From IMG/VR virus record IMGVR_UViG_3300042350_004528, positions 234,834 through 298,833 of that record: a stretch of 64,000 nucleotides of DNA, one strand, 5' to 3'. Positions 7,987-28,366 of the stretch are shown piece by piece (the stretch's first letter is position 1; each line of letters begins with the position of its first letter). A program made the translations under genes and the position numbers. Under the pieces are notes generated by a model, which did not search any database, was not told the origin of the DNA, and worked only from the letters and a program-made list of their open reading frames with translations.

Positions 7987-8595
7987 TTATATTAGATGTT
8001 TCAATATTTTTTCTTTAATACCAGATTGTTTTATACCCTCGAAATCTCTAGGCGTCCAGACAAAATTTTCTAAACCCCAATCGCGATCAAATGGGCCATA
8101 TGAACTATTCTCAACATGTATACCCATGTGTAAATCATCAACAGCGACCCAATGAGTAACTTCTGGATGATCTCTTAACCAACGAAGGATTTCAAAATGT
8201 CTTTCTTGCTCCCTATCAGAGGTTCGAGTCCACGGAAAATCGTTATGGTCAGGGACAAACCCTTCCTCTAACCAATTTGTAAAATGAAACACCTCTGTTC
8301 CATCAATTGGTCTTTTAATAATACCTTTAGATTCATAGTAGTCACCTAATTCTTCAATTGTCGCGTGTAATCGCCAATCGGAACTAACAACAATTTCAGC
8401 GCCAGTTTCTTCAAGTATTTCATTGAGCACTTTAACAGCTTTATCGTCAAAATTATCGAACCTATATTCAACAGGAATCTCTTTCGAGGTCATGGACAAC
8501 TTTCTACCACCCCACTTTTCTTGTTTTTTGTATCGACTACCCCAATTGTTTGACAAACAAATGACCCCGTCATTATCTAAAAATATAACTTTCAT
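7987..8595 (-). CDS. HAD domain protein, Swiss-Army-Knife RNA repair type (HAD_SAK_2-like)
   Basis: FLDNDGV, IVVSSDWR, WVAVDD. Confidence 0.8.
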   Translation of the reverse strand: MKVIFLDNDGVICLSNNWGSRYKKQEKWGGRKLSMTSKEIPVEYRFDNFDDKAVKVLNEILEETGAEIVVSSDWRLHATIEELGDYYESKGIIKRPIDGTEVFHFTNWLEEGFVPDHNDFPWTRTSDREQERHFEILRWLRDHPEVTHWVAVDDLHMGIHVENSSYGPFDRDWGLENFVWTPRDFEGIKQSGIKEKILKHLI

Positions 8596-8596
8596 C

Positions 8597-9169
8597 TTAA
8601 TAATTTAAATCAATGATATCTTTTTCCAACATTGCTTTTGCAATTTCATAGTAATGTTGGTTAAACCCATCTTTATTTCTTGGTGATGGTAATACATGCA
8701 CAAAATGATTACGTTGCCCGTAAAGCATATCAGAATCATCATCTATGATGATATAGTTTTCAACACCAGACTTATCCATGTACTCTTGCTGTACAACTTC
8801 ATCCCAATTAATATGGTGGAATTGTAGATCGTTATTTAGGTAATACTCTATCTCCATTCCTCGCGGAATTGAATAACCTTTGGCTCTCATACTAGGCGTG
8901 ATGCCAATGATTTTACCTGCCATCTCTTCCATCTCCCAAACCTTTCTCATAAAGTCTATACCACCGTGTCTCCAGGTTGAACTAACGACAATTTCGGCGC
9001 CAGTTTCAAGAATTAATTTGTTCATTAACTCTTTACTCCAAGAGCAAAATGTTTGATAATGATCTTTGCGGCCATCTTCCCAAACCCATTCTTTGTATTG
9101 ACACTCACCACTTCGATAAGCATTCTCGCAGTTCAACACACCGTCTATGTCAAGGAATATTACTTTCAT
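8597..9169 (-). CDS. HAD domain protein (HAD_SAK_2-like), tandem paralog
   Basis: FLDIDGVLN, IVVSSTWR, RGMEI, YIIIDDDSDML. Confidence 0.85.
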   Translation of the reverse strand: MKVIFLDIDGVLNCENAYRSGECQYKEWVWEDGRKDHYQTFCSWSKELMNKLILETGAEIVVSSTWRHGGIDFMRKVWEMEEMAGKIIGITPSMRAKGYSIPRGMEIEYYLNNDLQFHHINWDEVVQQEYMDKSGVENYIIIDDDSDMLYGQRNHFVHVLPSPRNKDGFNQHYYEIAKAMLEKDIIDLNY

Positions 9170-9378
9170 TTTTTATCATTTGATGAGAGTGAAGAATAAC
9201 CGAGCAAACCAATTAATACTTTGATACCAAGAGCTTGCCAAAACCCAATCTTTACTAAGATAGTGGGCATAGCTGGAACCAAACAAAAGTTCCATAACCA
9301 CATTATAGGTAACGCCAAGATAACCGCTAAAAGAAGCAGTAATCCGATCACAATCAAGAACGCTAATAATTTTTCCAT
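9166..9378 (-). CDS. Small membrane protein
   Basis: Two hydrophobic segments, MWLWN...IGFWQALG. Confidence 0.65.
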   Translation of the reverse strand: MEKLLAFLIVIGLLLLLAVILALPIMWLWNFCLVPAMPTILVKIGFWQALGIKVLIGLLGYSSLSSNDKK

Positions 9379-9421
9379 GTTACAAATATAATATTTTTTT
9401 ATTTAACAACAAAATTTATTT

Positions 9422-9751
9422 TTATTTTATAGTTACTTTTATGCTAACACCAATCGTATCTATTTGATAATCCGAATATATCTTGATTGTTTTTTCATTA
9501 TCTTCGTAGGTACCAGCATCACCATTAAAAAACAAAATAAACTTTTCACCAAAATAAACCTCGTTAGATTTATAATTTGTATCTTTATTGATTATCTCGT
9601 ACTTATATTCTAGTTTGTCTTTTTTATGATGGTTGTATAATAAAAAAGAAAATCCTATCAATATATGCACTGATAGGAACACACTTAAAATGAGTTTAAA
9701 ATTTTCTTTGAAAAATTCTAAGATTCGATTAGTTTTCGTCTCCTGGTTCAT
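9422..9751 (-). CDS. Hypothetical membrane-anchored protein
   Basis: N-terminal TM segment. Confidence 0.55.
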   Translation of the reverse strand: MNQETKTNRILEFFKENFKLILSVFLSVHILIGFSFLLYNHHKKDKLEYKYEIINKDTNYKSNEVYFGEKFILFFNGDAGTYEDNEKTIKIYSDYQIDTIGVSIKVTIK

Positions 9752-10274
9752 AATTCAATTGTTTAAGTATTATATAGTCGTTCGTTTGAATGTATAAGTT
9801 GTTTTTACGCATCAGGGTAATAAATGAGTCTAACGGACTTGTTAATGGGAAATATTCGATGACATCGGATGGTATCCCATAATTTATATAATTAAACCCA
9901 GATAATCTGCGATATTTCTTCTCTCTACCCATTTGTTTATAAGGTCGACCAGAATCATCAATAAAATTAAACTCTTCCCAGCCATCTGGATCGCGTTTAG
10001 GTATATCCCAAGTTTCCTCGTATTTTGGTAACTTTTCAATAACCTCATTCAATAATTCTGGGTTTTCACCACATTGTGTGACAGTACCCATTAGTTTGTA
10101 ATTTTTCGATTCCCCTGGATTAAATTCAAACAAGATGTTACCATCGCTGGTGATTTTGCCCCATGCGTGATCCATTGTGATGTTTTCTCTAGGTGAATCA
10201 ATCTCTATCAACAATAATTTGTTCTTTATTGTGTATACTTCAATTGGATTCCATATCGCTTTTAAGTCTTGCAT
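9729..10274 (-). CDS. Hypothetical protein
   Basis: 181-aa ORF. Confidence 0.55.
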   Translation of the reverse strand: MQDLKAIWNPIEVYTIKNKLLLIEIDSPRENITMDHAWGKITSDGNILFEFNPGESKNYKLMGTVTQCGENPELLNEVIEKLPKYEETWDIPKRDPDGWEEFNFIDDSGRPYKQMGREKKYRRLSGFNYINYGIPSDVIEYFPLTSPLDSFITLMRKNNLYIQTNDYIILKQLNYEPGDEN

Positions 10275-10275
10275 A

Positions 10276-10737
10276 TTAACTATTCTTTAATGTACTATCC
10301 CAAGCTACATAACAAACTAGATCGTAATTAACTTTACTGGCATCATTGTTCAATATATATGGTTCACTTGGTTTAAATTTAACGTATTCGAGTATATCCT
10401 CAGCGGGTAATAACTCACTAAGTTGTACTAATTGTTTTAAACTTAATGACTTAAAAACCAATTTACTCAACATCAAATTCTCTGGATGGAGTCTACTTGA
10501 GAAGTGATAAAAGATATTGTCTTTAGTTACTAAGTGTTCGTTTAAACAATAGTCAACCAAATACATGAACCTCAGATCTTTGAACCATTTCGGTATTGCC
10601 TGATCATTCACATCAATACCATGGACAATCTTAAATTGAATCTGGTCAATATAAACACCACGCTCAAATTTACCAGCAGTCAAGCCGTTAAATGATGGGT
10701 TTTTGGGATTCGTGGTTATGTAATTGTTTAAATCCAT
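10276..10737 (-). CDS. Hypothetical protein
   Basis: 153-aa ORF downstream of a TAnnTTTG element. Confidence 0.55.
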   Translation of the reverse strand: MDLNNYITTNPKNPSFNGLTAGKFERGVYIDQIQFKIVHGIDVNDQAIPKWFKDLRFMYLVDYCLNEHLVTKDNIFYHFSSRLHPENLMLSKLVFKSLSLKQLVQLSELLPAEDILEYVKFKPSEPYILNNDASKVNYDLVCYVAWDSTLKNS

Positions 10738-10764
10738 ACCACAAATATAATCAAAATTTTTTAA

Positions 10765-11388
10765 TTACAAAACTTTAATGACATTTTCTGGACTAATTGC
10801 ATGATAATTAGTGCCAACCGTTATTATCTTAATCCCATCAATCTCCATAATAATAGGTTTTGGGGCATCGTTTGATAAAATCATTAACTCGGAATCATGG
10901 GTGTAGCCACACTCAACCAAAGCGGTTGTTAGCCTATGAATAATATAAACGCTGAGGTAATAATCTAAAACTTTCATATGGTAATTATAATCAAGCTCCT
11001 TTTTACCCGTCATACTACCCTGTCCGCTACCATCACATTCTTTACAATCAACAATACTCTCGCAACATTCGCACTCAATCTTACCATCACCATCACATGC
11101 ATAACAATCATCGTATTCATCAATCATTGGAACCGTGTTCAACTTAGTAATTAAATCACCTAATTTTACTGGTACATTATTATCCAGTTTCTGGTTCTTT
11201 AATACAAATGAAAAATCTGGCATACCATCGGTTTTAATTGTGATCTCATCATCTGGTATTTGCTCTTTTGGTACCATAATTAAAAGTCGAGAGTCTGTTG
11301 CGCAATAATAATCTTCGTACTCAAAATACGCATTTAGTTTGTCCGCTGCAAACATTTTAGCTGCATCTAGTAATTTAATCTTACTCAT
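10765..11388 (-). CDS. Hypothetical protein with DnaJ-type Cys-rich zinc finger
   Basis: CYACDGDG...CECC...CKECDGSG; start placed at MSKIK. Confidence 0.65.
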   Translation of the reverse strand: MSKIKLLDAAKMFAADKLNAYFEYEDYYCATDSRLLIMVPKEQIPDDEITIKTDGMPDFSFVLKNQKLDNNVPVKLGDLITKLNTVPMIDEYDDCYACDGDGKIECECCESIVDCKECDGSGQGSMTGKKELDYNYHMKVLDYYLSVYIIHRLTTALVECGYTHDSELMILSNDAPKPIIMEIDGIKIITVGTNYHAISPENVIKVL

Positions 11389-11671
11389 GTTGTCTTTTAT
11401 TTTTAAATTCTTCAAGTTGTTTTTCCACAATTCTATTCCAATCCATTTCATCGTACTTTGAGCCAATGGTTCCAAAATCTTTCTTATACTCGAATATTTC
11501 TTTAACCATTAAATCTTTATCAATTGGTGTAAACTTGTCCCAGTTTGTTAATATCATATCAACCGTTCGGCTAACAATAGGGGTTCTTCTCCCTAATGCA
11601 TATCTAAAAGCTGATATCATTATAACAGAGTCGACTCTAAATATTTTTCTAAATCTCGGATCTTTCGTCAT
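11381..11671 (-). CDS. Conserved phage hypothetical protein
   Basis: SAFRYALGR motif. Confidence 0.6.
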   Translation of the reverse strand: MTKDPRFRKIFRVDSVIMISAFRYALGRRTPIVSRTVDMILTNWDKFTPIDKDLMVKEIFEYKKDFGTIGSKYDEMDWNRIVEKQLEEFKNKRQHE

Positions 11672-11672
11672 G

Positions 11673-12372: not shown

Positions 12373-12373
12373 A

Positions 12374-12970
12374 TTAAATTATTTGATCGATAACACCATT
12401 TTTCAAAGCTTCTTCTGCCGAAAAATACCAATCTTTTTTAAGATTTTTGATTTGGTCAAGTTGTTTCTGTTTCAGACGAGTACAATCAATTAAATGTGCG
12501 TCATAAACCATCATAATCCTTTTGGTTTCTTCAAGATTTTCCTTCAATATACTAAGTTTATCGTATGGCATTTGATCCAAACACTCATGATACATGTATG
12601 TCGATAACTTGTGTCCGTATCTTTTATCCCCAGATACTAATACAAGTAGAGCCATCGACATAGCAGAACCAAAACAATAAGTATAGACCTCGGTATTCGA
12701 ACTCTCTATTGCCGCGATTAAAGCAAAGCCATCATATACCGATCCCCCAAAGCTATTCACAATCAATTTTATTGGCTTACGTTCATAATCAACCAAATTC
12801 TCTTGGTTCTCGTCATCATACTCATTAATCTCAGCAATATATTGGATTATATCGCCTACGGAAGATTCATCTATCTCGCTACTTAGTGTGATCGTCCTTG
12901 ATGGATTTTCCCTATCAAAAGAAAAATACCTATTCTTCTTTTTGTTCTGGTTTTTTAATTTCATATTCAT
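12374..12970 (-). CDS. clpP: ClpP-like protease subunit (divergent copy)
   Basis: VNSFGGSVYDG, GSAMSMA (catalytic Ser), MYHE, FSAEEALKNGVID. Confidence 0.85.
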   Translation of the reverse strand: MNMKLKNQNKKKNRYFSFDRENPSRTITLSSEIDESSVGDIIQYIAEINEYDDENQENLVDYERKPIKLIVNSFGGSVYDGFALIAAIESSNTEVYTYCFGSAMSMALLVLVSGDKRYGHKLSTYMYHECLDQMPYDKLSILKENLEETKRIMMVYDAHLIDCTRLKQKQLDQIKNLKKDWYFSAEEALKNGVIDQII

Positions 12971-13268
12971 ATGTCAACCATGGTTTTTTTTGTTGGGTGT
13001 TTAGTGCCTCAACTATCTTATTATAATTTTCTTCATAAAATCTTTCACCGTCTTCCGAATTTGCCCAAAATAGAAATCCTGGTTCAGTCTGCGTCCTCCC
13101 CAGGATTTCTTTTGTTGCTCTTCTATCTTTTTTAAGAAATGAAATACTAACATAGTTCAGTATAAACTTCCCATCAGTCTTTGACCAATACGCCAGTTGG
13201 CCAAATTTTTGTTTGTTCTTTACTCTGGCATTTTCAATAATCTCTATTAAAAATTTAACATTTCCCAT
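12930..13268 (-). CDS. Hypothetical protein
   Basis: 112-aa ORF. Confidence 0.5.
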   Translation of the reverse strand: MGNVKFLIEIIENARVKNKQKFGQLAYWSKTDGKFILNYVSISFLKKDRRATKEILGRTQTEPGFLFWANSEDGERFYEENYNKIVEALNTQQKKPWLTYEYEIKKPEQKEE

Positions 13269-14650
13269 TAACTAGATTCTTCCATATCAACCACACCCGA
13301 GTCTTTAACTATACCCTCAAGAACCTTAAACTCAAAAGATTTGTGTTTGTAAATTCTAGGTACCAGACCAGATTCTAATCTGACACATACACCCTCACGG
13401 ATATGGGTATCATCGAGCATTGATTTACCTTTAGAATAAATATCAACAAGTTCAGTAATCTTGTCATTAAAATCCCTATCACCGTTTATACTTGGATAGG
13501 TTAATTCCATTTCAATTCTTCTGAAACGTGTTATCTCTGGAACATGTTTTACACCTATCTCATTACATCTTTTAACAACATCATCCCAAGTGTAATCAAC
13601 TGATTGGCCATCTGGGTTGGTCATTGTCATACGGTACACATAAAAGTCTTGTTGGGCTGTCGAACAACCATATGAGTAAACCATGTGCTTTTTATCGCCC
13701 ATGTTGGAATACTGTTTCGTGAATTCCTTATCACCCATTTTACTTGTATCAACAGATGGCATGATTGGCGTATTCTCATTCTCATAACCAACAATCTCAA
13801 GATAAACAGTCTCACCTTTTCTTAGATTACCTTTGAAAAGAGCGAAAGCTTTATCTCTTATGGTTGGATCATGGAATTGGGTTGCATTTGATTTAGCCTC
13901 CTCCAAAACAACTCTGCGTGTACCAGTTAAATAAGCCCATTCAGTCTCGTTTATCTTGATACCAAGCTTAATCAATAATCTTTCAAACCAATTTAAATCA
14001 CGGTCAACCAACACATGCCCAACTCTATGAGAAGTTCCGTGTAGTTTTTCTGTGATGACAACCAAATCCTCACGATTTATTTGATGTACATTCTTACCAA
14101 AATGTTCGGTATCAATATGTTCCTTGAACATAACCGAAGTTTTTGCCACTCTGGTTTTTTTACCTTGGTTTTGTTGAGCGGCTTTTATTGTGTTCGGGTT
14201 GATGTACTTATTACAAATTGGTACACCACCCCATTCATCAATCTCAAGACCCTCATCAACCAGACCAGTCACATAAATGAAACCAAAACTGTGTAATGGT
14301 GTCCAGAAACCATCTGAGATTTCCCCACGAAATCTCTGGGCCCTAACCCTACGGTTATCATCAAACATACCAGCTTTATCATCTGGGAATTTGTTCTTTG
14401 TTTTATCTCGATATAAGTTATTCGCATGGCAAAACTCATGAGATAACTGACCATCACATGGGAAGTATACCCCCCAATGATCTTCTTTGCAATCTAAACC
14501 AACCACCACTTGATTACCGTGGCATGTCGCTAATTGCACCTTATCCGCATTAGGATGCGGTCTAACGTTTTTAAGTTTTGTTACTATTCCTTTATACATA
14601 TTTTTTACTTTGATTCTACCATTACGTAAGTACCCTCTACCATACCCCAT
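13268..14650 (-). CDS. ATP-dependent RNA ligase with N-terminal OB/tRNA-binding-like domain (DRB0094/Rnl5-like)
   Basis: N-terminal HPNADKVQ...FPCDGQL, motif I TEKLHGTS, REGVCVR, YKHKSFEF. Confidence 0.8.
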   Translation of the reverse strand: MGYGRGYLRNGRIKVKNMYKGIVTKLKNVRPHPNADKVQLATCHGNQVVVGLDCKEDHWGVYFPCDGQLSHEFCHANNLYRDKTKNKFPDDKAGMFDDNRRVRAQRFRGEISDGFWTPLHSFGFIYVTGLVDEGLEIDEWGGVPICNKYINPNTIKAAQQNQGKKTRVAKTSVMFKEHIDTEHFGKNVHQINREDLVVITEKLHGTSHRVGHVLVDRDLNWFERLLIKLGIKINETEWAYLTGTRRVVLEEAKSNATQFHDPTIRDKAFALFKGNLRKGETVYLEIVGYENENTPIMPSVDTSKMGDKEFTKQYSNMGDKKHMVYSYGCSTAQQDFYVYRMTMTNPDGQSVDYTWDDVVKRCNEIGVKHVPEITRFRRIEMELTYPSINGDRDFNDKITELVDIYSKGKSMLDDTHIREGVCVRLESGLVPRIYKHKSFEFKVLEGIVKDSGVVDMEESS

Positions 14651-14886: not shown

Positions 14887-14985
14887 ATTATTTTTATTAA
14901 GGTACAAAGATAGTGATTATTTTTTTAATTCGCAAATAAAAAAACCCCACAGAGGGGGTTTTTTAAAAAAAAATTCATATTAAAT

Positions 14986-15312
14986 TTAAATAGAGAATAT
15001 TTCTGCGAGTTGATCTATGAATTTATTCTTTGGTACATAACCGCTTTTAGTAGCGATTTTTGCCCCATTCTTGTAATATAAAAGGGTTGGAATTCCTCTT
15101 ACATTATTTTTTGCAGCTAACTCTGGACAATTATCCACGTTAACTTTGCATATTTTAACGATACCAATTTGATCCGCAGTTTCTTCTAGAACTGGGGCTA
15201 AAGATTTACAAGGGCCGCACCATTCAGCGTAGAAATCAACCACTACCTTATCTTGACTTGAGATTATTTTTTCGAAATCGCTTTCATTTTCAATTGAAAT
15301 TACATTTGACAT
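14986..15312 (-). CDS. trxA: Thioredoxin
   Basis: DFYAEWCGPCK, VRGIPTL. Confidence 0.95.
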   Translation of the reverse strand: MSNVISIENESDFEKIISSQDKVVVDFYAEWCGPCKSLAPVLEETADQIGIVKICKVNVDNCPELAAKNNVRGIPTLLYYKNGAKIATKSGYVPKNKFIDQLAEIFSI

Positions 15313-15367
15313 ATTAATTTTATTAATTTTTTATTATTTTATACAACTATAAATATACAAATTTTGT

Positions 15368-16159
15368 TTATAATGATAAATCGTTTAATGAATAAATTCT
15401 TTTATAGCCAACATTATATCTTCGGTTATGTTCGCAATCCATAAGAAATGTGCATATACCAGCGTTGTTCAATTCAACAAAATTTTCATATCTATCATCA
15501 ACAAACCAATCGATACCAGATTTTTTTGCTACCTCAACTTTTGATTGGTCAAACCCGATACTATAAACTGGAACCGCTGGGAAATTCCACTTTTTTAACC
15601 ACTCTTCAGTCCATTCCCTGGGAATTGATCTTGATGTGATATAACAATGTGGCTCAAATGGTAGGTCTTTTGGGGTCACTTTGGGCTCAATGTTGAGCCA
15701 GAAATCCTTATCATCTCGCATTAATTCGAATTTTTCCTTAATATTTCTATCAAAATTCCAAAATAACACTGGTTCAATGATACCATGTCTTTTTGTCCAA
15801 GCGCCTAACCAATCAGCTAAAACTTCATCAATATCCAACCCTATCTTTGGTGGGTTAAGGTACCGATGTCGTCTATCATCACCTTGTGGGTGTATCTTAT
15901 AGAACTCGGTTAAAAAAGCTGCGTTTGTTAATACATGTGAAATATGTAACAATCCACTTTCAGGATCATGGTCTTCACCGTTCTTAAAAGCATTCAAGTG
16001 CCTCTCAAGTGATGCTATTACCTCAGACCATTGTAGGCCGTTCTCCCAATCCCTTTCGCCGTATATCTCAGCACCCTTCATAAGTGCTGTCGCTAACTGG
16101 TTATACGCAAATGGGGGAACCAGGTCATAGCGAGGTTTATCTTTTTTTTCTCTATTCAT
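15368..16159 (-). CDS. Fusion: dATP/dGTP diphosphohydrolase-like domain (DUF5664-like) + HAD 5'-nucleotidase-like domain
   Basis: N-terminal KPRYDLVP...GAEIYGERDW...DPESGLLHISH; C-terminal LDIDEVLADW...ITSR...FVDD. Confidence 0.75.
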   Translation of the reverse strand: MNREKKDKPRYDLVPPFAYNQLATALMKGAEIYGERDWENGLQWSEVIASLERHLNAFKNGEDHDPESGLLHISHVLTNAAFLTEFYKIHPQGDDRRHRYLNPPKIGLDIDEVLADWLGAWTKRHGIIEPVLFWNFDRNIKEKFELMRDDKDFWLNIEPKVTPKDLPFEPHCYITSRSIPREWTEEWLKKWNFPAVPVYSIGFDQSKVEVAKKSGIDWFVDDRYENFVELNNAGICTFLMDCEHNRRYNVGYKRIYSLNDLSL

Positions 16160-16161
16160 AG

Positions 16162-16743
16162 TTATTGATTAATGTTGAAGGCTCGATCATATGCCCCATC
16201 TAGTATAATCTTTTTATGGAGTTTCATTGTTATTTCAGCATCATATAAAGCATTATGTTGACCACCATTCTTATCCAAGCCAAGTATTAGGTGCCTATTT
16301 TTTTTAGGATCGTGATACCAAATCTTTAAAACTGTTGCCATATCATATGGTTGATATCCGTTAAAATTATTTGGTAATTTTCTGGACGGTTCTCCCATAA
16401 AATATAAATCCATGAATAAAACCCAATCAAAAGCTAAAGTATCACCCCAAAACTCAATATCCTTAAATTGTTTTAACCAAGTAACTAAAGCATCTGATAT
16501 TGTTTGTTTATCTTGTTTTATGGTGAAGGATTTATTCTCCTCGTCATTTTCAAAAAAATGAACGTATTCGGAATATGTGAGCTTGGGTATAACATTATCT
16601 TTAATCCATTGGTCACATTGTGATTCATCGTAGTCATTAAATTCAGCGTAAAATTTATGACCATTTTCTGTTATCATCCCTAAAGAAATGGGTGTGGTTG
16701 CTTTATGCAAACCAGTAAATTCAAAATCAAAAAATATTCTCAT
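16162..16743 (-). CDS. DEDDh 3'-5' exoribonuclease (Rv2179c-like), second copy
   Basis: FDFEFTG, WGDTLAFDW, QHNALYDA. Confidence 0.8.
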   Translation of the reverse strand: MRIFFDFEFTGLHKATTPISLGMITENGHKFYAEFNDYDESQCDQWIKDNVIPKLTYSEYVHFFENDEENKSFTIKQDKQTISDALVTWLKQFKDIEFWGDTLAFDWVLFMDLYFMGEPSRKLPNNFNGYQPYDMATVLKIWYHDPKKNRHLILGLDKNGGQHNALYDAEITMKLHKKIILDGAYDRAFNINQ

Positions 16744-16767
16744 GGTACAAATATAGGTTATTTATTT

Positions 16768-17184
16768 TTATTTAGCAACTTTATTTAATTTTAATACAAA
16801 TTCAGTTAAATCAGTCGTATTGTAATTAGCCATTTTCTCATCAATCGAACCATTAATAGAATCTTTAATTAAATTGTAATTTTCTTCTTTTAAAAATTTC
16901 AAAGACTCATCATCAGACCATATTTTATCGCCCCAGGGATGTATAAAAAATTGTTTCAAAGTCATATTGATTGTTGGTACTGGTTGTTTATGACCAGCAA
17001 CAATTTCAGGTATTCCTATTTCTTCGGTTAAGTAAAAAAATAGAATCGCTTTACGCTCACTAAGAATGGTGATTAATTCTTCCATCTTTGGAAGAGCTAA
17101 ACGATCGTGTATATTGCGATGATGATTAATCGTTCTATGTAAATCGTTTAGCTTTTCTACAACCTGTTCGTTTGTATAAAACAT
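16768..17184 (-). CDS. Hypothetical protein
   Basis: 138-aa ORF. Confidence 0.5.
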   Translation of the reverse strand: MFYTNEQVVEKLNDLHRTINHHRNIHDRLALPKMEELITILSERKAILFFYLTEEIGIPEIVAGHKQPVPTINMTLKQFFIHPWGDKIWSDDESLKFLKEENYNLIKDSINGSIDEKMANYNTTDLTEFVLKLNKVAK

Positions 17185-17185
17185 G

Positions 17186-17629
17186 TTAATCGATTATAGT
17201 TTCAATTGTATGGGGCACTACCCATCTAGCGCAGTCTTGGGGTAAGCGATGGATATGTTTATAGTTATTTATATAACCCATCATGTTTGCTGAACCGACA
17301 GCATTAGCTGAATGAACCATTACCTTACAAACAGGCGCACCATTCAACCACTGTTCAACTAACCATTTAGTGCAGTCCATACCAGTTTTTTCGGTGATGT
17401 TATCATAGTTCAATTGATAATTGTGATAAACATTTGTGTGCCATTCTTTCATCGCACTATCACCAAGATCATGATCAAGTGATATTAAATCAATATTCTC
17501 TAAACCAATTTCGGTTATTTTGGAAACAAACTCATCGTAGTCTCTGACAACAGTCCACTCGATTGTCATGTGTGTTGACGGGTTAGGTAAAGGCGTCCTA
17601 AGATCGTCTAAGTATATATTATATCTCAT
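17186..17629 (-). CDS. Cyclic-phosphate-processing receiver-like domain protein (cREC-like)
   Basis: YLDDLRTP, ISLDHDLG, TGMDCTKWL, VHSAN. Confidence 0.8.
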   Translation of the reverse strand: MRYNIYLDDLRTPLPNPSTHMTIEWTVVRDYDEFVSKITEIGLENIDLISLDHDLGDSAMKEWHTNVYHNYQLNYDNITEKTGMDCTKWLVEQWLNGAPVCKVMVHSANAVGSANMMGYINNYKHIHRLPQDCARWVVPHTIETIID

Positions 17630-18024
17630 AATTTTATCTCAAATCTATTTTTCATTATTTCTAATTTATCTTCTGGTACACCGTGTATGTTTTTACCACC
17701 ATGCCTATTTTCTACGATTAAAGATGTTACTTTGTAATCGTAGTATTTAGCTTTTTCGTAGTAGAAATCCATTTCCCATTCTTGGGTAAATGTGTTAGAT
17801 ACTATGATTATCGATGTATCGTTAGCCATAGCTTTTTCCGTTTGGATCATACACCAGTTGTGTGCCATTTTAATATCGGCTGGGTTAAACTTGTATTCTC
17901 CGTCCTTCATGAAATACATGTCAGCTTCAAAGTGAGCATATCCAGCACCCTTTGCACCGATTAAATCAGCGACTGTTGACTTACCACTTCCAGGCAATCC
18001 GCGTAATAATATTAAATCTTTCAT
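17626..18024 (-). CDS. P-loop kinase (AAA_33 / polynucleotide-kinase-like)
   Basis: RGLPGSGKST, EAD, VSNTFTQEWE, HGVPED. Confidence 0.85.
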   Translation of the reverse strand: MKDLILLRGLPGSGKSTVADLIGAKGAGYAHFEADMYFMKDGEYKFNPADIKMAHNWCMIQTEKAMANDTSIIIVSNTFTQEWEMDFYYEKAKYYDYKVTSLIVENRHGGKNIHGVPEDKLEIMKNRFEIKL

Positions 18025-18482
18025 TTTTTTACTTCTTTTGTTTTTATTTCTCTTAAATCTTCTGTTGGTACAATTGTTAAAACATCATACCTACCTCGTC
18101 TGCGATACATTTTATACGGTTCGGGTTCATCTGTAACAACCATCATTAATTTATCCTCAACCATCTTAATTAAATTGTCTCGTTTAACAACCAACCAAGA
18201 ATCATCAGTTTCGAATGAAATGTAATCAGCCATACCATATAACCAACCAGGTTTACCGTGAACATTTTCGATCTCAACCCAATGTATAGCTGGGTCAACA
18301 CTTGCATCCGAACGGCTAATTTTTTTCAAACCCTTTATATCAAACTTAATATTATCTATTTGAACATCCCAATGTTCATTAATATCTTGTTCGGTTGTTG
18401 GGTAAACAAGTTCGTGACCAGGTTTACTAACCAAATCAACAAACTCTTTTTCTTTTAATTTACCATCAGACAAAAACCCCAT
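18021..18482 (-). CDS. Hypothetical protein, possible PD-(D/E)XK nuclease fold
   Basis: HWD...FDIK and GWLYG patterns. Confidence 0.5.
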   Translation of the reverse strand: MGFLSDGKLKEKEFVDLVSKPGHELVYPTTEQDINEHWDVQIDNIKFDIKGLKKISRSDASVDPAIHWVEIENVHGKPGWLYGMADYISFETDDSWLVVKRDNLIKMVEDKLMMVVTDEPEPYKMYRRRGRYDVLTIVPTEDLREIKTKEVKK

Positions 18483-18961
18483 TACGCCAATCTAAACTGA
18501 TTTATAAATGTTCTAATTTTATAGTTAGTTTCACCACCAATAGCTTCAATAAACAAATCAATCTCTTCGTTAGTTGCGAATGGTTGCGGTTCTGGGTATT
18601 TTGTTTTATTAAAGATTCGTTCATCGATAATAAAAACAATCGCCGTTAACTGGTCACCCAAATCTGGTTCATAAAATGCCGCATGTGGAATACCCAGGTC
18701 TAATAAAGCCATCAAGTGTCTATTCATAGAACCAAACGGTAGGCCATCGTCAGTACTCATATTGGTATTTGTTGTACCACCATTCAGAATAATGAATGTC
18801 TTCCAATTATCAGCCCAATCTTTATAGATAGCTTCCATGTTTTTCACACCATCACAATTTCTACTATACTCAACAACAGCGTGTCCAAATTGGATGCCTT
18901 GTTGAATTGGTGATATATTATACGGAACCAACCCGTACATTCTAAGTTCTAATCTTTCCAT
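18482..18961 (-). CDS. Peptidyl-tRNA hydrolase 2-like protein
   Basis: QQGIQFGHA, ILNGG, EPDLGDQLTAI. Confidence 0.7.
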   Translation of the reverse strand: MERLELRMYGLVPYNISPIQQGIQFGHAVVEYSRNCDGVKNMEAIYKDWADNWKTFIILNGGTTNTNMSTDDGLPFGSMNRHLMALLDLGIPHAAFYEPDLGDQLTAIVFIIDERIFNKTKYPEPQPFATNEEIDLFIEAIGGETNYKIRTFINQFRLA

Positions 18962-19266
18962 TAAAAATCTAATTCAAGTTGTTTAAGTTCGGTATCAATT
19001 TCATTTAACACCAATTTATTGTATGATTTGGTTACATCGCGATCATTCAAATCAATAATAGTTGGCCCATCCTTTGATTTACCATGTGCCGCAGAAATCA
19101 ATTCATTATTCTTGTAAACGAAAACAATAGGTTGATACATCTCAAAATATTTTTGAGATTGCTCTGGTTGAGCTGGGTTACAAATATCCCAAAGGACTTT
19201 GGCGTTAGCTAATCTAACTAATTCAATCGCGTGAGCAGCATTTTTCGGTTTTCTGTATGTGTACAT
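18961..19266 (-). CDS. Hypothetical protein
   Basis: ORF; start placed at MYTY. Confidence 0.5.
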   Translation of the reverse strand: MYTYRKPKNAAHAIELVRLANAKVLWDICNPAQPEQSQKYFEMYQPIVFVYKNNELISAAHGKSKDGPTIIDLNDRDVTKSYNKLVLNEIDTELKQLELDF

Positions 19267-19310
19267 AATTTTTTTTACAAAGATAAGAATAAAATTTTTA
19301 ATATGCAAAT

Positions 19311-19826
19311 TTATGAAAAAGTTAAAATTATATCCTTAACGGTATCATCGTTTGTGTGTGTCCTGGCCGTTAATAACTTATACTTCTCAAAAAATGGGTC
19401 GTACTCTGATGAAAAATATTGATATTTATTCAACTCGTCTATATTTTTCGCAAAATATTCATTGACCATAATTCTTTCACTTGATGTGGTCTGCATAAGC
19501 ATTATGTAAACCAAGAAACCATCATCAGTTGTTAAAAAAACAACGTTATTTTTAAAATTGATTGATATGAAATTTAAAAAATCGTCATTAATCATACCCG
19601 AATATTTGAATGGGCATAATTTATACAGAACACCCATCTGGCCAATCAATATCGGTTGTATTTCTTGATTAAAAGAATTGGTGATAAATATATTATCACC
19701 ATTTTCTTCAAGGATTTTTGCAAAAAAAATATCCTTGAACACATTCTTATTTAAGTCAATATAATACTTTATGATTTTGTTAAAAGCCTCATCAAAAAAT
19801 TTTGGATCTTTCATTTTAACCATCAA
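19311..19826 (-). CDS. Hypothetical protein
   Basis: 171-aa ORF. Confidence 0.5.
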   Translation of the reverse strand: MMVKMKDPKFFDEAFNKIIKYYIDLNKNVFKDIFFAKILEENGDNIFITNSFNQEIQPILIGQMGVLYKLCPFKYSGMINDDFLNFISINFKNNVVFLTTDDGFLVYIMLMQTTSSERIMVNEYFAKNIDELNKYQYFSSEYDPFFEKYKLLTARTHTNDDTVKDIILTFS

Positions 19827-20917
19827 CTTATCGCATATATTCTTTTTCTAAAACGAATTAACAAGTCGTCAACAAATTTTCTATCAACAGAATTAGGTAG
19901 ATCTGATTTTGCGTAAAGGTCATCCAAAAGTGTGATTTTTGATTCCGCTTCGGCAAGAAGATCCTCATATTCAGCATCACCATTTCTTATTTTAAGTAAT
20001 TCCTCAGCATCTGGTCTTTTGACGATCACTTGTTTAAGTTCGGCAATCTCGGTTGCCATACGTATCAACCTAATACAGTGCATCATATTTTTTGAATCAT
20101 AACCCTTACCATGTTCTTGGTTTGTGTTATATCGATCGTCATTACGCTTTTCAACCCAATCCCAGTATTCCTTATAATCTTTACAGTAAGAAGTATAACC
20201 ATCCTTGTTATAGATAATTGTCGCAACTGGCTTTTCGCCAAATGGAATGGAACTTAATCTAACCTCATTCGATGTGTCATCATCATTGACGATGCCACGA
20301 TAACCGAGCCTAGAATTTTCTTTACTGGCGTAATGATCATAAAACATGGCGTATACATCTCTGGCATGTGGTACATTAACCAAACCACATTTGTTCTGTA
20401 CATAACCACTATTGTCCAAAAATGCTTTGAGTGGGATCGATTTATAACCATCGACAACATAGCAAAAATCCAATATAGATTTGCGCTCTTTGTCAACTGG
20501 GTTTACAATTTTTTTGTTTAACCCGCGAGCTTTTTTAATTTGTGCGACAGCGTACCCACCAAATGAATCGCGGCAAACTTTACTGATGAACTTATCCTTA
20601 TGTTGTAGAATCATATCAAACATTGGGTGTTTGTAAAGTATATTCTCTTCGGGCATATTGAATAACTCAATTATGTTTGGGTTTTGCGATTGTAATAATT
20701 GCAAGAACCTACCAATCTCATAGTAGACAGCATCATTTGTGGCATCCGAAACTTGTTCAATATAGTCATATCCCAGTACGTTATCAAGCGGTAAGTAGTA
20801 AACTCCACGATAATCGGTATCGGATGTTGGTTTGTGTGTACCATACGCCCTTGATCCAGATATTGTTTCAAACAATAAAAGTCCATTCGTTCTTAAATAA
20901 TCTATCGTTAATCGCAT
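19823..20917 (-). CDS. Pol-beta superfamily nucleotidyltransferase (RlaP/YcgL-like)
   Basis: SGSRAYG...SDTDYRGVY, NPNIIE, YDSKNMMHCIRL. Confidence 0.85.
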   Translation of the reverse strand: MRLTIDYLRTNGLLLFETISGSRAYGTHKPTSDTDYRGVYYLPLDNVLGYDYIEQVSDATNDAVYYEIGRFLQLLQSQNPNIIELFNMPEENILYKHPMFDMILQHKDKFISKVCRDSFGGYAVAQIKKARGLNKKIVNPVDKERKSILDFCYVVDGYKSIPLKAFLDNSGYVQNKCGLVNVPHARDVYAMFYDHYASKENSRLGYRGIVNDDDTSNEVRLSSIPFGEKPVATIIYNKDGYTSYCKDYKEYWDWVEKRNDDRYNTNQEHGKGYDSKNMMHCIRLIRMATEIAELKQVIVKRPDAEELLKIRNGDAEYEDLLAEAESKITLLDDLYAKSDLPNSVDRKFVDDLLIRFRKRIYAIS

Positions 20918-28078: not shown

Positions 28079-28138
28079 ACTTCTTTATTTTATTATAAAT
28101 AGTATGAGATAAATAAAAGTAATAAAAAATTAGATTTG

Positions 28139-28363: not shown

Positions 28364-28366
28364 ATA

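What the first reader, a model, noticed from the sequence alone, without database searches (positions are those of the whole stretch)
7987..20917. Dispersed RNA healing/sealing toolkit
Within 13 kb: two tandem HAD_SAK_2-like phosphatases, an Rnl5-like ligase, a cREC-like protein adjacent to a P-loop kinase, a PTH2-like hydrolase, an RlaP-like nucleotidyltransferase and a DEDDh exonuclease (a second lies at 4283). These families are established members of RNA-repair neighbourhoods. With Thg1, the CCA fusion and the TROVE-like protein, this implies heavy pressure from RNA-cleaving host defence and fits the attenuator model.
Basis: partly seen in the sequence, partly recalled or inferred. Interest (0 to 1): 0.6.

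Follow-up and report, generated by a model that had tools for sequence, protein, structure and literature searches.

The report
Jumbo phage RNA end-repair gene set
A 299-kb freshwater jumbo phage carries, within 13 kb, a near-complete set of enzymes for mending broken RNA ends (kinase, phosphatases, ligase, nucleotide-adder); this toolkit is real, but its kind has already been described in jumbo phages.

Summary
Profile searches confirm two tandem HAD_SAK_2 phosphatases, an Rnl5-type RNA ligase, a cREC protein overlapping a small P-loop kinase, an RlaP nucleotidyltransferase and a DEDDh exonuclease, all at the stated coordinates with catalytic motifs intact. The "PTH2-like hydrolase" (18482-18961) fails the Pfam PTH2 model and is supported only by fold. 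The second exonuclease (4283) scores below Pfam's cut-off but keeps its motifs.

The genes are not one operon. About two thirds of the 25 ORFs in the span are unrelated (ClpP, thioredoxin, a MazZ-like nucleotide enzyme, a DenV-like enzyme) or unknown. Gene order is identical in the closest relative (a 307-kb contig) but shuffled in more distant ones. There, cREC, the small kinase and an RNA ligase still co-occur, and the kinase usually sits within 2 kb of a ligase.

The genome has one ligase, one such kinase, no RtcB and no 2H phosphoesterase. The likely pathway is therefore cREC, then HAD phosphatase plus kinase, then optionally RlaP, then the ligase.

This toolkit is described for jumbo phages in Iyer et al. 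2021, so this is a new member of a known kind. Nothing here shows pressure from host defence. 23 of the 27 phage tRNA genes lack an encoded CCA, so part of the wider set probably serves tRNA maturation.

The parts
7987..8595 (-). HAD_SAK_2 phosphatase, copy 1 (202 aa); predicted RNA 3'(2')-phosphate phosphatase
   Evidence: Pfam PF18143 E 1.5e-21, 77.7 bits against a 27.5-bit cut-off. The DxDG motif, the SS motif and a C-terminal DD are readable in the translation.
8597..9169 (-). HAD_SAK_2 phosphatase, copy 2 (190 aa); an old tandem paralogue of copy 1
   Evidence: Pfam PF18143 E 4.2e-20. It is 34-37% identical to copy 1 over 80-100 residues. HAD motifs are intact.
13268..14599 (-). Rnl5-type ATP-dependent RNA ligase: N-terminal OB domain plus nucleotidyltransferase domain. 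The ORF is open to 14650, but homologues start at Met18, giving 443 aa.
   Evidence: Pfam RNA_ligase plus PHA02142 OB. PHROG 968 at 3e-65. TIGR02306, the DraRnl family, at E 4e-13 but below its cut-off. A family profile finds only NgrRnl in the PDB, E 4e-16. Motif I Lys and motifs III, IV and V are invariant in alignment A2. Homologues are 443 aa.
16162..16743 (-). DEDDh 3'-5' exonuclease, RNase AS / Rv2179c-like (193 aa)
   Evidence: Pfam PF16473 6e-11. NCBIfam RNase_AS 1.3e-12, below its cut-off. The DxE, D and H-x4-D motifs are visible. A TATATTTG motif lies at 16748-16755, just upstream.
17186..17629 (-). cREC (cyclic-phosphate-processing receiver-like) protein (147 aa); predicted 2',3'-cyclic phosphodiesterase
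   Evidence: Pfam PF20274 5e-22. D8, D9, D52 and D54 are conserved across 22 homologues (A3). No 2H phosphoesterase match (PF13563) in the genome.
17626..18024 (-). Small P-loop kinase (132 aa); predicted polynucleotide 5'-kinase
   Evidence: Pfam AAA_33 7e-8. PHROG 2071 at 4e-39 and PHROG 505 'polynucleotide kinase' at 8e-9. Best PDB match is T4 Pnk, weak, E 0.014 over the P-loop region. The P-loop, Asp35 and Arg107/127 are invariant (A4). It is the only AAA_33 match in the genome. In relatives it lies within 2 kb of an RNA ligase in 12 of the 15 records with both matches over the Pfam cut-off.
18021..18482 (-). PD-(D/E)xK-fold protein (153 aa), translationally coupled between the PTH2-like gene and the kinase gene.
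   Evidence: AlphaFold2 model with pLDDT 96. VIA-align Z 8.8 to I-Ssp6803I, 8.5 to NhoI, 7.7 to Hjc and PvuII; ranks 1-12 and 14-18 of the list are restriction, homing or Holliday-junction nucleases or MepB. E11, D39, D48, K50 and E70 are conserved in 65 sequences.
18482..18961 (-). PTH2-fold protein (159 aa); possible peptidyl-tRNA hydrolase
   Evidence: No Pfam PTH2 match. Ten of the 11 best Foldseek hits are Pth2 structures (rank 10 is an uncharacterised protein), E 2e-3 to 0.1. VIA Z is at most 4.0. The ESM Atlas's own model aligns to a PF01981 cluster at TM 0.63/0.56, and to a viral cluster with 11% PF01981 members at TM 0.82. The family is strongly conserved (A1).
19823..20917 (-). RlaP nucleotidyltransferase (364 aa); adds 1-2 nucleotides to RNA 3'-OH ends
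   Evidence: Pfam PF10127 3e-20. PHROG 388 at 4e-53. The GS...DxD motif is visible. Only copy in the genome. Family biochemistry is in bioRxiv 10.64898/2025.12.29.696909.
4283..4804 (-). Second DEDDh exonuclease (173 aa); overlaps the SmpB gene by 4 nt
   Evidence: Pfam RNase_T E 9e-4, 20.3 bits, below the cut-off. DEDDh motifs are visible.
4801..5235 (-). SmpB, the tmRNA-binding ribosome-rescue protein (outside the finding's span but on the same theme)
   Evidence: Pfam PF01668 E 6e-48.
23979..26063 (+). CCA-adding enzyme fused to a C-terminal HAD_SAK_1 phosphatase (694 aa)
   Evidence: Pfam PolyA_pol 1e-24, PolyA_pol_RNAbd 3e-15, HAD_SAK_1 1e-7, above its cut-off.
29140..29982 (-). Thg1-family 3'-5' nucleotidyltransferase (280 aa)
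   Evidence: Pfam PF04446 E 1.7e-26.
28138..45861 (-). Arrays holding 26 of the genome's 27 tRNA genes (the 27th is at 3232-3306), plus a tmRNA gene at 38774-39152
   Evidence: ARAGORN. Rfam tmRNA RF00023 at 78.8 bits, E 6e-29. 23 of 27 tRNA genes lack an encoded CCA.
15368..16159 (-). Not part of the toolkit: MazZ-like dATP/dGTP diphosphohydrolase fused to an NT5C-like HAD domain (DNA-precursor metabolism)
   Evidence: Pfam PF18909 7e-28; NT5C 7e-4. A short PurA/PurZ-like gene lies 3.3 kb before the window.
12374..12970 (-). Not part of the toolkit: ClpP-like protease. Thioredoxin (14986-15312) and a DenV-like Pyr_excise protein (20908-21393) also lie within or beside the span.
   Evidence: Pfam CLP_protease 5e-23 and Thioredoxin 3e-29; Pyr_excise 3e-7.

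Best explanation
This is the RNA end-healing and sealing part of a larger tRNA and translation-support island in a freshwater jumbo phage, probably one infecting Flavobacteriia. The proposed pathway for an RNA (most plausibly a tRNA) cut to 2',3'-cyclic-phosphate and 5'-OH ends is:
1. cREC opens the cyclic phosphate (inferred; this domain appears never to have been assayed).
2. One or both HAD_SAK_2 phosphatases remove the remaining 3'/2' phosphate (inferred from the family).
3. The 132-aa P-loop kinase phosphorylates the 5'-OH (inferred from the family and its linkage to ligases).
4. If a nucleotide was lost, RlaP adds one or two back to the 3'-OH (activity shown for bacterial family members).
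5. The Rnl5-type ligase seals 3'-OH to 5'-phosphate (activity shown for NgrRnl and DraRnl on nicked duplexes).

The T4 Pnkp/Rnl1 logic is thus spread over at least five separate small proteins. The DEDDh exonucleases, CCA::HAD_SAK_1, Thg1, the PTH2-fold protein, SmpB and tmRNA extend this to 3'/5'-end restoration and ribosome rescue. They probably also serve routine maturation of the phage's own 27 tRNAs.

The genes are dispersed among unrelated accessory genes rather than forming one operon.
For: **Families and motifs.** All family calls are above curated cut-offs, except PTH2 and the second exonuclease, and catalytic motifs are intact.

**Ligase.** A profile of the ligase family matches only the Rnl5 exemplar NgrRnl in the PDB, E 4e-16, from the OB domain through motif III.

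**Genome logic.** The genome has one PF09414 ligase, one AAA_33 kinase and one RlaP. Its only HAD_SAK domains are the tandem pair and a weak match in the CCA enzyme. It has no RtcB match and no 2H phosphoesterase match (PF13563). A 5'-phosphate ligase therefore needs exactly the healing steps these neighbours could supply.

**Gene order.** The PTH2-like, PD-(D/E)xK, kinase and cREC genes overlap by 1-4 nt. The order is identical in the nearest relative, a 307-kb contig.

**Wider relatives.**
- Of 19 large cREC-bearing relatives, 16 have a PF09414 ligase and 18 have the small kinase. The kinase lies within 2 kb of a ligase in 12 of the 15 records with both matches over the Pfam cut-off.
- In 80 cREC loci, 46 have a kinase, a HAD_SAK_2 or calcineurin-type phosphatase, or an Rnl5- or Rnl1-type ligase within 4 kb, and 26 have a ligase.

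**Placement.** Chance placement is unlikely.

**Literature.** The same inference is published for jumbo phages (PMC7824862). RlaP biochemistry is in 10.64898/2025.12.29.696909. Rnl5 biochemistry is in PMC4408790 and PMC5397189 (abstracts).
Against: - No activity or expression data exist. No RNA sequencing run holds the locus.
- cREC and HAD_SAK_2 functions are predictions only.
- Characterised Rnl5 ligases seal nicks in duplexes, and their physiological role is called 'uncharted' (PMC5397189 abstract). Sealing an anticodon-loop break is not established for this family.
- Only about a third of the genes in the span belong to the set. MazZ-like, thioredoxin, DenV-like and ClpP genes are interspersed.
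- RlaP occurs in only 1 of 19 relatives and HAD_SAK_2 in 9 of 19, so the full set is not a conserved unit.
- No host nuclease is identified.
Confidence: 0.65

Rival explanations
1. The set mainly serves routine tRNA biogenesis and translation support, not repair of defence damage. It would mature and maintain the phage's own 27 tRNAs and tmRNA: 3'-trailer trimming by the DEDDh exonucleases, CCA completion, 5'-end proofreading by Thg1, and recycling of peptidyl-tRNA. The ligase, kinase and phosphatases would handle occasional processing breaks.
For: - 23 of 27 phage tRNA genes encode only N73-C74 followed by A/T, with no CCA. CCA addition and 3' trimming are therefore needed whether or not the host attacks.
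- All tRNAs, the tmRNA, SmpB, Thg1 and the CCA enzyme lie in the same arm of the genome and, except for the + strand CCA enzyme gene, on the same strand.
- The exonuclease at 4283 overlaps the SmpB gene.
Against: - Maturation of bacterial-type tRNAs needs no kinase, cyclic phosphodiesterase or ligase, and ARAGORN reported no tRNA introns.
- tRNA-His already has an encoded G-1 opposite C73, so Thg1 is not obviously required for maturation.
- Linkage of the kinase to ligases across relatives points to break repair.
Confidence: 0.2
2. The set belongs to nucleotide and DNA metabolism. The HAD phosphatases and the small kinase would act on free (deoxy)nucleotides to reshape pools, perhaps for a modified genome. 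The ligase would seal RNA-ended nicks in DNA:RNA hybrids during replication or repair, so the 'RNA repair' reading would come from family names alone.
For: - Interspersed genes are of this type: a MazZ-like dNTP diphosphohydrolase fused to an NT5C-like HAD, thioredoxin and a DenV-like enzyme. A short PurA/PurZ-like gene lies just upstream of the window.
- Thymidylate synthase is a frequent cREC neighbour in relatives, in 16 of 80 loci.
- Rnl5 enzymes accept nicks whose 3'-OH strand is RNA (abstracts).
- The kinase's PDB similarity is limited to the P-loop region.
Against: - The HADs match the RNA-repair-associated HAD_SAK_2 model, not nucleotidase models.
- RlaP acts on RNA.
- cREC, kinase, ligase and phosphatase co-occur and lie near one another in many shuffled relatives.
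- The third HAD_SAK domain is fused to a tRNA CCA-adding enzyme.
Confidence: 0.1
3. The co-location is chance. Accessory genes that function independently happen to sit in one gene-dense accessory arm.
For: - Two thirds of the ORFs in the span are unrelated or unknown.
- Neighbourhoods are heavily shuffled in relatives, and homing endonucleases are present.
Against: - P is about 6e-7 genome-wide, or about 5e-4 within the 76-kb arm, for six loci in 11.8 kb.
- The same families recur beside cREC in independent arrangements.
Confidence: 0.05

Closest known systems
Jumbo-phage RNA repair / ribosome-rescue gene sets described by Iyer, Anantharaman, Krishnan, Burroughs & Aravind 2021 (Viruses 13:63, PMC7824862, section 3.4.9)
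   Same: The same component list appears there: ATP-dependent RNA ligases, polynucleotide kinases, 'Swiss-army-knife' HAD phosphatases, cREC, RlaP, CCA-adding enzyme, Thg1 and PTH2, alongside many phage tRNAs. That paper also reports operonic linkage of cREC to RNA ligases.
   Different: - That paper names Rnl1 and Rnl2 as the main phage ATP-dependent ligase families. Here the ligase is closest to the Rnl5 exemplar.
- No TROVE, RtcB or 2H match was found.
- This genome also has SmpB and a tmRNA.
- I could not check whether this metagenomic phage lineage was in their set of 224 genomes.
Phage T4 Pnkp + Rnl1 tRNA repair pathway, which counters the PrrC anticodon nuclease (established knowledge; cited in PMC7824862)
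   Same: The chemistry is the same: heal 2',3'-cyclic-phosphate and 5'-OH ends, then seal with an ATP-dependent ligase. T4 also has an RlaP homologue, NrdC.11.
   Different: - T4 fuses the kinase and a HAD phosphatase in one protein. Here the kinase, the candidate cyclic phosphodiesterase (cREC) and the phosphatases (HAD_SAK_2) are separate proteins.
- The ligase is Rnl5-type with an N-terminal OB domain, not Rnl1. tblastn with an Rnl1-type protein from a relative found none in this genome.
- The kinase resembles T4 Pnk only over the P-loop region, E 0.014.
Rnl5 nick-sealing RNA ligases NgrRnl (Naegleria gruberi) and DraRnl (Deinococcus radiodurans) (PMC4408790, PMC5397189, PMC7261155)
   Same: Both have an N-terminal OB domain followed by the nucleotidyltransferase domain, with no C-terminal domain. 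NgrRnl is the only PDB family matched by the profile, E 4e-16. TIGR02306 matches at E 4e-13.
   Different: - This ligase is 443 aa against about 340, with insertions in the nucleotidyltransferase domain.
- Its TIGR02306 score of 49 bits is far below the 151-bit equivalog cut-off, and only the N-terminal half aligns well.
- Its substrate preference is unknown.
Archaeo-eukaryotic peptidyl-tRNA hydrolase Pth2 (PF01981; e.g. PDB 1xty, 1q7s, 2zv3)
   Same: The fold matches. Pth2 structures fill 10 of the 11 best Foldseek ranks, and the Atlas model aligns to a PF01981 cluster at TM 0.63. A Q-x-x-H-A stretch and a D-x-G...T stretch are invariant in the phage family and recall Pth2 motifs (the comparison is from my memory of Pth2).
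   Different: - There is no Pfam or PDB sequence match.
- The protein is 159 aa against about 115, with an insertion and a C-terminal extension.
- Whether the catalytic residues correspond was not established.

Membership tests
HAD_SAK_2 (PF18143) | Score above Pfam's gathering cut-off | tested here: met
   77.7 and 73.0 bits against a 27.5-bit cut-off.
HAD_SAK_2 (PF18143) | HAD catalytic motif I (DxD) and motifs II and IV present | tested here: met
   Both translations show DxDG near residue 7-10, an SS(D/T)W stretch and a C-terminal DD.
HAD_SAK_2 (PF18143) | Phosphatase activity on RNA 3'/2'-phosphate ends | not testable with these tools
   This needs an enzyme assay. The role is a published prediction only (PMC7824862).
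Rnl5 RNA ligase (NgrRnl/DraRnl; TIGR02306) | N-terminal OB domain followed by a nucleotidyltransferase domain, with no C-terminal domain | tested here: met
   PHA02142 OB at residues 23-119 and RNA_ligase at 197-429 of 460. The profile aligns to NgrRnl from residue 8 through motif III.
Rnl5 RNA ligase (NgrRnl/DraRnl; TIGR02306) | Covalent nucleotidyltransferase motifs I, III, IV and V with the motif I lysine | tested here: met
   K185, E268/G271, E402/G403 and K420/K425 (443-aa numbering) are invariant in 21 sequences. Motif I aligns with the KxDG of NgrRnl.
Rnl5 RNA ligase (NgrRnl/DraRnl; TIGR02306) | Score above the NCBIfam equivalog cut-off | tested here: not met
   48.9 bits against 151.15, with only profile positions 5-177 of 341 matched. 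It is therefore 'Rnl5-type', a divergent branch, not an equivalog.
Rnl5 RNA ligase (NgrRnl/DraRnl; TIGR02306) | Seals 3'-OH(RNA)/5'-PO4 nicks in duplexes | not testable with these tools
   This needs biochemistry. The reference activity is in PMC4408790.
cREC (PF20274) | Score above Pfam's cut-off and conserved receiver-type aspartates | tested here: met
   78.8 bits against 27. D8 and D9 are nearly invariant and D52 and D54 invariant in 22 sequences.
cREC (PF20274) | Genomic association with RNA ligases and end-processing enzymes | tested here: met
   In 80 cREC loci, 46 have a kinase, phosphatase or ligase within 4 kb, and 26 have a ligase. In the window, the kinase gene overlaps it and the ligase is 3 kb away.
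cREC (PF20274) | 2',3'-cyclic phosphodiesterase activity | not testable with these tools
   This is a prediction in PMC7824862. My paper search found no biochemical study.
Polynucleotide 5'-kinase (T4 Pnk-like P-loop kinase) | P-loop, catalytic Asp after strand 2, and phosphate-binding arginines | tested here: met
   The GxxGxGKS P-loop, D35, R107 and R127 are invariant in 16 sequences. AAA_33 scores 33.4 bits against 27.
Polynucleotide 5'-kinase (T4 Pnk-like P-loop kinase) | Specific similarity to characterised polynucleotide kinases rather than nucleotide kinases | tested here: inconclusive
   T4 Pnk is the best PDB hit, but at E 0.014 and over residues 1-39 only. PHROG 505 'polynucleotide kinase' scores 8e-9, while the best PHROG is an unnamed 'ATPase'. 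Support is contextual: it lies within 2 kb of a ligase in 12 of 15 relatives.
RlaP (PF10127) | Score above the cut-off and the Pol-beta GS...DxD motif | tested here: met
   73.3 bits against 23. GS and DxD are at residues 21-35 of the translation. I did not map the third conserved Asp described for PfRlaP.
RlaP (PF10127) | Proximity to an RNA ligase gene | tested here: met
   It lies 5.2 kb from the only ligase, on the same strand. The order is the same in the 307-kb relative.
PTH2 peptidyl-tRNA hydrolase (PF01981) | Sequence match to the Pfam model | tested here: not met
   No match for the protein at E<=0.01 or anywhere in the genome at E<=1. A family profile finds no Pth2 in the PDB.
PTH2 peptidyl-tRNA hydrolase (PF01981) | Pth2 fold | tested here: met
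   Ten of the 11 best Foldseek hits are Pth2 structures, probability up to 0.98 but E no better than 2e-3. VIA Z is 3.2-4.0 over 99-107 residues. The Atlas model (pLDDT 0.89) gives TM 0.63/0.56 to a cluster that is 100% PF01981. The support is moderate, not strong.
PTH2 peptidyl-tRNA hydrolase (PF01981) | Catalytic residues and peptidyl-tRNA hydrolase activity | not tested
   My model is poor in its N-terminal half (pLDDT about 50), so no reliable residue-level superposition was made.
DEDDh exonuclease (Rv2179c-like / RNase AS) | Score above the Pfam cut-off and the DEDD plus H motifs | tested here: met
   16162-16743 scores 42.8 bits against 27 and its motifs are visible. NCBIfam RNase_AS is below its cut-off, 48 against 200 bits. 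The second copy, 4283-4804, is below the Pfam cut-off.
T4-type tRNA break-repair pathway | Restores function of anticodon-nicked tRNA and rescues the phage from an anticodon nuclease | not testable with these tools
   This needs reconstitution and infection experiments.

The most novel reading that the evidence does not exclude
In this phage lineage the end-healing job of T4 Pnkp would be split among three free-standing proteins. The never-assayed cREC domain would be the sole 2',3'-cyclic phosphodiesterase. The two diverged HAD_SAK_2 paralogues would divide 3'- and 2'-phosphate removal. The PD-(D/E)xK protein encoded between the PTH2-like and kinase genes would be a previously unrecognised RNA-end-trimming component of the pathway. 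Together they would feed an Rnl5-type ligase whose natural substrate would then be identified as broken tRNA.
Probability: 0.2. Interest if true: 0.55.

Novelty: new member of a known kind. Interest (0 to 1): 0.3.

Why it matters
The physiological substrates of Rnl5 ligases are described as uncharted. cREC and HAD_SAK_2 are known only from comparative genomics. RlaP was characterised only recently.

This genome is a clean test bed. It has exactly one ligase, one small kinase, one cREC, one RlaP and a tandem HAD pair, with no RtcB or 2H match to confound the result. Each predicted step can therefore be assigned to one small, easily expressed protein.

The same genome arm also holds 27 tRNAs, a tmRNA, SmpB, Thg1 and a CCA-phosphatase fusion. 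That makes this phage a compact example of how far a virus can go toward owning its own translation-maintenance machinery. Conceptually it adds little beyond what Iyer et al. 2021 already proposed.

Tried and rejected
- **DNA match to sequenced phages.** megablast of the 13-kb span against 50,697 phage records found nothing.
- **Single-sequence PDB searches.** The ligase, RlaP and the PTH2-like protein gave nothing useful. A profile of the PTH2-like family also found no Pth2.
- **Conserved operon idea.** tblastn of all 38 regional proteins against 80 cREC loci showed that neither this window's ligase nor its RlaP lies within 10 kb of cREC in any of them, and that neighbours are shuffled. I therefore dropped 'conserved operon' in favour of 'co-occurring, loosely linked set'.
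- **Kinase-cREC binding.** Complex prediction on the kinase and cREC returned no verdict, score 0.00. It is reported here only, and is not evidence either way.
- **TROVE, RtcB and 2H.** No match in the genome.
- **Sigma-70 promoters.** These sites are not enriched, 83 found against 99 expected, so that scan gave no operon map.
- **Expression.** No RNA run holds the locus. Read laying was not used, because contigs cannot show transcripts.
- **Foundational paper.** Burroughs & Aravind 2016 (NAR 44:8525) is not held in the library. Family definitions were taken from Pfam descriptions and from Iyer et al. 2021.
- **Still unknown.** 16768-17184, 18961-19308, 19311-19826 and most of the 9.4-12.4 kb block have no Pfam match and no informative PHROG match.

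Full report
**Setting**

The window is the last 64 kb of a single-contig, 298,833-bp virus record with 34% G+C. Near-identical sequence occurs in at least 20 lake or freshwater metagenome runs from 20 studies, and none is RNA. No sequenced phage matches at the DNA level. The best cultured relative of the cREC protein is Flavobacterium phage immuto, at 71% identity.

The octamer TATATTTG fits what I recall as the TAnnTTTG form of the Bacteroidota -7 promoter element. It occurs 21 times against 9 +/- 3.6 expected. Sixteen copies lie on the coding strand, several a few bases upstream of start codons. Sigma-70-type sites are not enriched. The host is therefore probably a member of the Flavobacteriia; this is an inference.

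**Checking the observation**

All ORFs between 3.3 and 22.8 kb are on the minus strand. Pfam matches above the curated cut-offs:

| Coordinates | Family | E-value |
|---|---|---|
| 7987-8595 | HAD_SAK_2 | 1.5e-21 |
| 8597-9169 | HAD_SAK_2 | 4e-20 |
| 13268-14650 | RNA_ligase + N-terminal PHA02142 OB domain | 3e-9; 2e-6 |
| 16162-16743 | Rv2179c-like DEDDh exonuclease | 6e-11 |
| 17186-17629 | cREC_REC | 5e-22 |
| 17626-18024 | AAA_33 kinase | 7e-8 |
| 19823-20917 | RlaP | 3e-20 |

PHROGs agree: RNA ligase 3e-65, nucleotidyltransferase 4e-53, polynucleotide kinase 8e-9. The expected catalytic motifs can be read in the translations. They are invariant in alignments of homologues: ligase A2, cREC A3, kinase A4.

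Homologues of the ligase begin at its Met18, so the real gene is probably 13268-14599, 443 aa. The two HADs are old paralogues, 34-37% identical.

**The ligase is Rnl5-type**

A single-sequence PDB search found nothing. A profile of 21 family members matched only Naegleria gruberi RNA ligase, the Rnl5 exemplar, at E 4e-16. The alignment runs from the N-terminal OB domain through motifs I and III. NCBIfam TIGR02306, the DraRnl family, matches at E 4e-13 but at 49 bits against a 151-bit cut-off. This is a divergent, longer branch of the Rnl5 architecture, not an equivalog.

**The PTH2-like claim is the weakest**

- The protein at 18482-18961 has no Pfam PTH2 match, and the whole genome has none at E<=1. 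A profile of its very conserved family (A1) finds no Pth2 in the PDB.
- My AlphaFold2 model was mediocre, pLDDT 70. Even so, 10 of its 11 best Foldseek hits are Pth2 structures (rank 10 is an uncharacterised protein), E 2e-3 to 0.1. VIA-align places five Pth2 entries on top, at Z of only 3.2-4.0.
- The ESM Atlas's own better model (pLDDT 0.89) aligns to a eukaryotic cluster that is 100% PF01981 at TM 0.63/0.56. It also aligns to a viral cluster with 11% PF01981 members at TM 0.82.

I accept 'PTH2 fold'. Activity and family membership remain open.

**What else is in the span**

Only 8 of the 25 ORFs belong to the claimed set. The others include:
- ClpP, thioredoxin, and a MazZ-like dATP/dGTP diphosphohydrolase fused to an NT5C-like HAD.
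- A small membrane protein and several proteins with no informative match.
- A DenV-like Pyr_excise gene, which abuts the RlaP end of the span at 20908-21393.

One unknown could be resolved. The 153-aa protein at 18021-18482 is translationally coupled between the PTH2-like and kinase genes.
- It folds with pLDDT 96.
- It matches I-Ssp6803I at Z 8.8, NhoI at 8.5, and Hjc and PvuII at 7.7. Seventeen of the top 18 hits are restriction, homing or Holliday-junction nucleases or MepB.
- E11, D39, D48-x-K50 and E70 are conserved in 65 homologues.

It has the PD-(D/E)xK fold. Whether it is a homing-type DNA nuclease or part of the RNA pathway is open.

**Is the grouping meaningful?**

*Within the genome.* These are the only copies of each family found by the searches run. 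There is one PF09414 ligase, one AAA_33 kinase, one RlaP, the two HAD_SAK_2 proteins and a weak HAD_SAK match in the CCA enzyme. tblastn with an Rnl1-type ligase and two calcineurin-type phosphoesterases from relatives found none in this genome. There is no RtcB match and no 2H phosphoesterase match. Six independent loci within 11.8 kb of 299 kb has P about 6e-7. Restricted to the 76-kb accessory arm, P is about 5e-4. Both values are post hoc.

*Nearest relative.* A 307-kb JGI contig, whose ligase is 90% identical, keeps the same order throughout: DenV-like, RlaP, two unknowns, PTH2-like, PD-(D/E)xK, kinase, cREC, unknown, exonuclease, MazZ-like, thioredoxin, ligase, ClpP, then further on the HAD pair, PfkB, ferritin-like, SmpB and the second exonuclease.

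*More distant relatives.* In 80 IMG/VR loci with cREC at 68-86% identity, the neighbourhood is thoroughly shuffled. The commonest neighbours are nonetheless repair-type:
- two calcineurin-type phosphoesterases;
- a 361-aa Rnl5-type ligase;
- the small kinase;
- a T4 Rnl1-type ligase;
- HAD_SAK_2.

Of the 80 loci, 46 have at least one of these within 4 kb, and 26 have a ligase. Thymidylate synthase and a GIY-YIG homing endonuclease are also frequent neighbours.

*Whole records.* In 19 large relatives, a PF09414 ligase is present in 16, the small kinase in 18, HAD_SAK_2 in 9 and RlaP in 1. The kinase lies within 2 kb of a ligase in 12 of the 15 records with both matches over the Pfam cut-off.

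The core of cREC, kinase and ligase is therefore a co-inherited, loosely linked functional set. The phosphatase is interchangeable between HAD and calcineurin types, and RlaP is an optional extra. The window's phage has one of the fuller versions.

**Mechanism**

The sole ligase is a 3'-OH/5'-phosphate enzyme, and no RtcB or 2H match was found. Repair of a metal-independent RNase cut (2',3'-cyclic phosphate plus 5'-OH) therefore needs a cyclic phosphodiesterase, a phosphomonoesterase and a 5'-kinase. The only candidates are cREC, the HAD_SAK_2 pair (plus the HAD_SAK_1 domain on the CCA enzyme) and the AAA_33 kinase.

What is shown elsewhere:
- RlaP adds one or two nucleotides to RNA 3'-OH ends, prefers damaged RNA, and is needed to restore aminoacylation of tRNA that has lost a nucleotide (10.64898/2025.12.29.696909).
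- Rnl5 enzymes seal nicks with an RNA 3'-OH strand (PMC4408790).

What is inferred: every step assigned to this phage's own proteins, the cREC and HAD activities in general, and the identity of the substrate.

**Wider island and the maturation alternative**

The same genome arm holds:
- all 27 tRNA genes of the genome;
- a tmRNA at 38774-39152 that ARAGORN missed (Rfam 78.8 bits, E 6e-29);
- SmpB, E 6e-48;
- Thg1 and a 694-aa CCA-adding enzyme with a C-terminal HAD_SAK_1 domain.

23 of the 27 tRNA genes carry only C74 after the discriminator and then A/T. Only four encode CCA (Rfam boundaries agree). CCA completion and 3' trimming are therefore routine needs of this phage, whether or not the host attacks. 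tRNA-His already has G at -1 opposite C73, so Thg1 is not obviously needed for maturation. I treat maturation as a complement for the peripheral enzymes and as a weaker rival for the kinase-cREC-HAD-ligase core.

**Comparison with what is known, and novelty**

It covers ligases with kinases and phosphoesterases, SAK-type HADs, cREC linked to ligases, RlaP, the CCA enzyme, Thg1, PTH2 and many tRNAs. They offer the same counter-defence rationale.

What differs here is detail:
- the ligase is Rnl5-type rather than Rnl1 or Rnl2;
- healing is fully split into separate small proteins, with cREC as the only cyclic-phosphate candidate;
- a PD-(D/E)xK protein sits inside the coupled gene run;
- SmpB and tmRNA are also present.

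This is a new member of a known kind. The claims of 'heavy pressure from host defence' and an 'attenuator model' have no support in the data I could obtain. The TROVE-like protein was not detected.

**Limits**

- No expression or activity data exist.
- Complex prediction on the kinase and cREC gave no verdict and is not used as evidence.
- The foundational Burroughs & Aravind 2016 paper is not held in the library.

Noticed in passing
window 38774-39152 (-) and 4801-5235 (-): The phage encodes both a full-length tmRNA (Rfam RF00023, 78.8 bits, E 6e-29; missed by ARAGORN) and SmpB (Pfam 6e-48). That is a complete trans-translation ribosome-rescue pair. The tmRNA overlaps the 5' end of the listed ORF 38252-38830 by about 57 nt.
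   Followed up: partly
genome C1:230729-231574 (-), about 3.3 kb before the window start; window 15368-16159 (-); window 40581-41621 (-): Three genes together hint at a PurZ/MazZ-type 2-aminoadenine (Z-base) DNA pathway or other purine-pool remodelling: a short (343-aa) adenylosuccinate-synthetase homologue (PF00709, E 3e-42), the MazZ-like dATP/dGTP diphosphohydrolase::NT5C-like fusion, and a GMP-reductase/IMPDH-like gene. DatZ and a dedicated polymerase were not searched for.
   Followed up: partly
window 18021-18482 (-): A 153-aa protein with a confident PD-(D/E)xK nuclease fold (pLDDT 96; Z 8.8 to homing endonuclease I-Ssp6803I) and conserved E/D/DxK/E residues. It overlaps both the PTH2-like gene and the kinase gene. 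Its family is large, 1266 clusters at 50% identity. One of the 65 aligned members also gave weak Macro-domain matches (E 0.004-0.006).
   Followed up: yes
window 3232-3306 and 28138-45861 (-): All 27 tRNA genes have C at position 74. 23 of them then continue with A/T rather than CA, so CCA is not encoded. Only tRNA-His, Ile(GAT), Gly(TCC) and one Met encode the full CCA. tRNA-His has an encoded G-1 and C73.
   Followed up: yes
window, e.g. 5240-5247, 9383-9390, 10742-10749, 16748-16755 (all -): TATATTTG occurs 21 times against 9 +/- 3.6 expected, mostly on the coding strand and often 5-12 nt upstream of start codons. It resembles what I recall as the Bacteroidota -7 promoter element TAnnTTTG. 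This suggests several internal promoters with very short leaders, and a Bacteroidota host.
   Followed up: partly
window 23979-26063 (+): The CCA-adding enzyme (PolyA_pol head plus RNA-binding domains) carries a C-terminal HAD_SAK_1 phosphatase domain (E 1e-7) and an unassigned N-terminal region of about 150 residues. It is one of the few plus-strand genes in this arm.
   Followed up: partly
window 12374-12970 (-) and about 59263-59772 (-): There are two ClpP-like protease paralogues, 29% identical (tblastn E 7e-11). One lies inside the finding's span, next to the ligase.
   Followed up: no
window 31885-33537, 36498-37721, 54508-56181, 3846-4280, 5322-5957, 6003-6782 (all -): Other accessory genes: a carbamoyltransferase (TobZ/NodU-like, with a Sua5/YrdC-like weak match), a C-methyltransferase, a leucine-rich-repeat protein (557 aa), an MGS-like domain protein, a ferritin-like protein and a PfkB sugar kinase.
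   Followed up: no
L082 7088-7456 against window 17186-17629: In the closest relative the called cREC gene is 122 aa and starts after the N-terminal DD motif. In a second contig it is 142 aa. This may be a gene-calling difference or a real N-terminal truncation in that relative.
   Followed up: no
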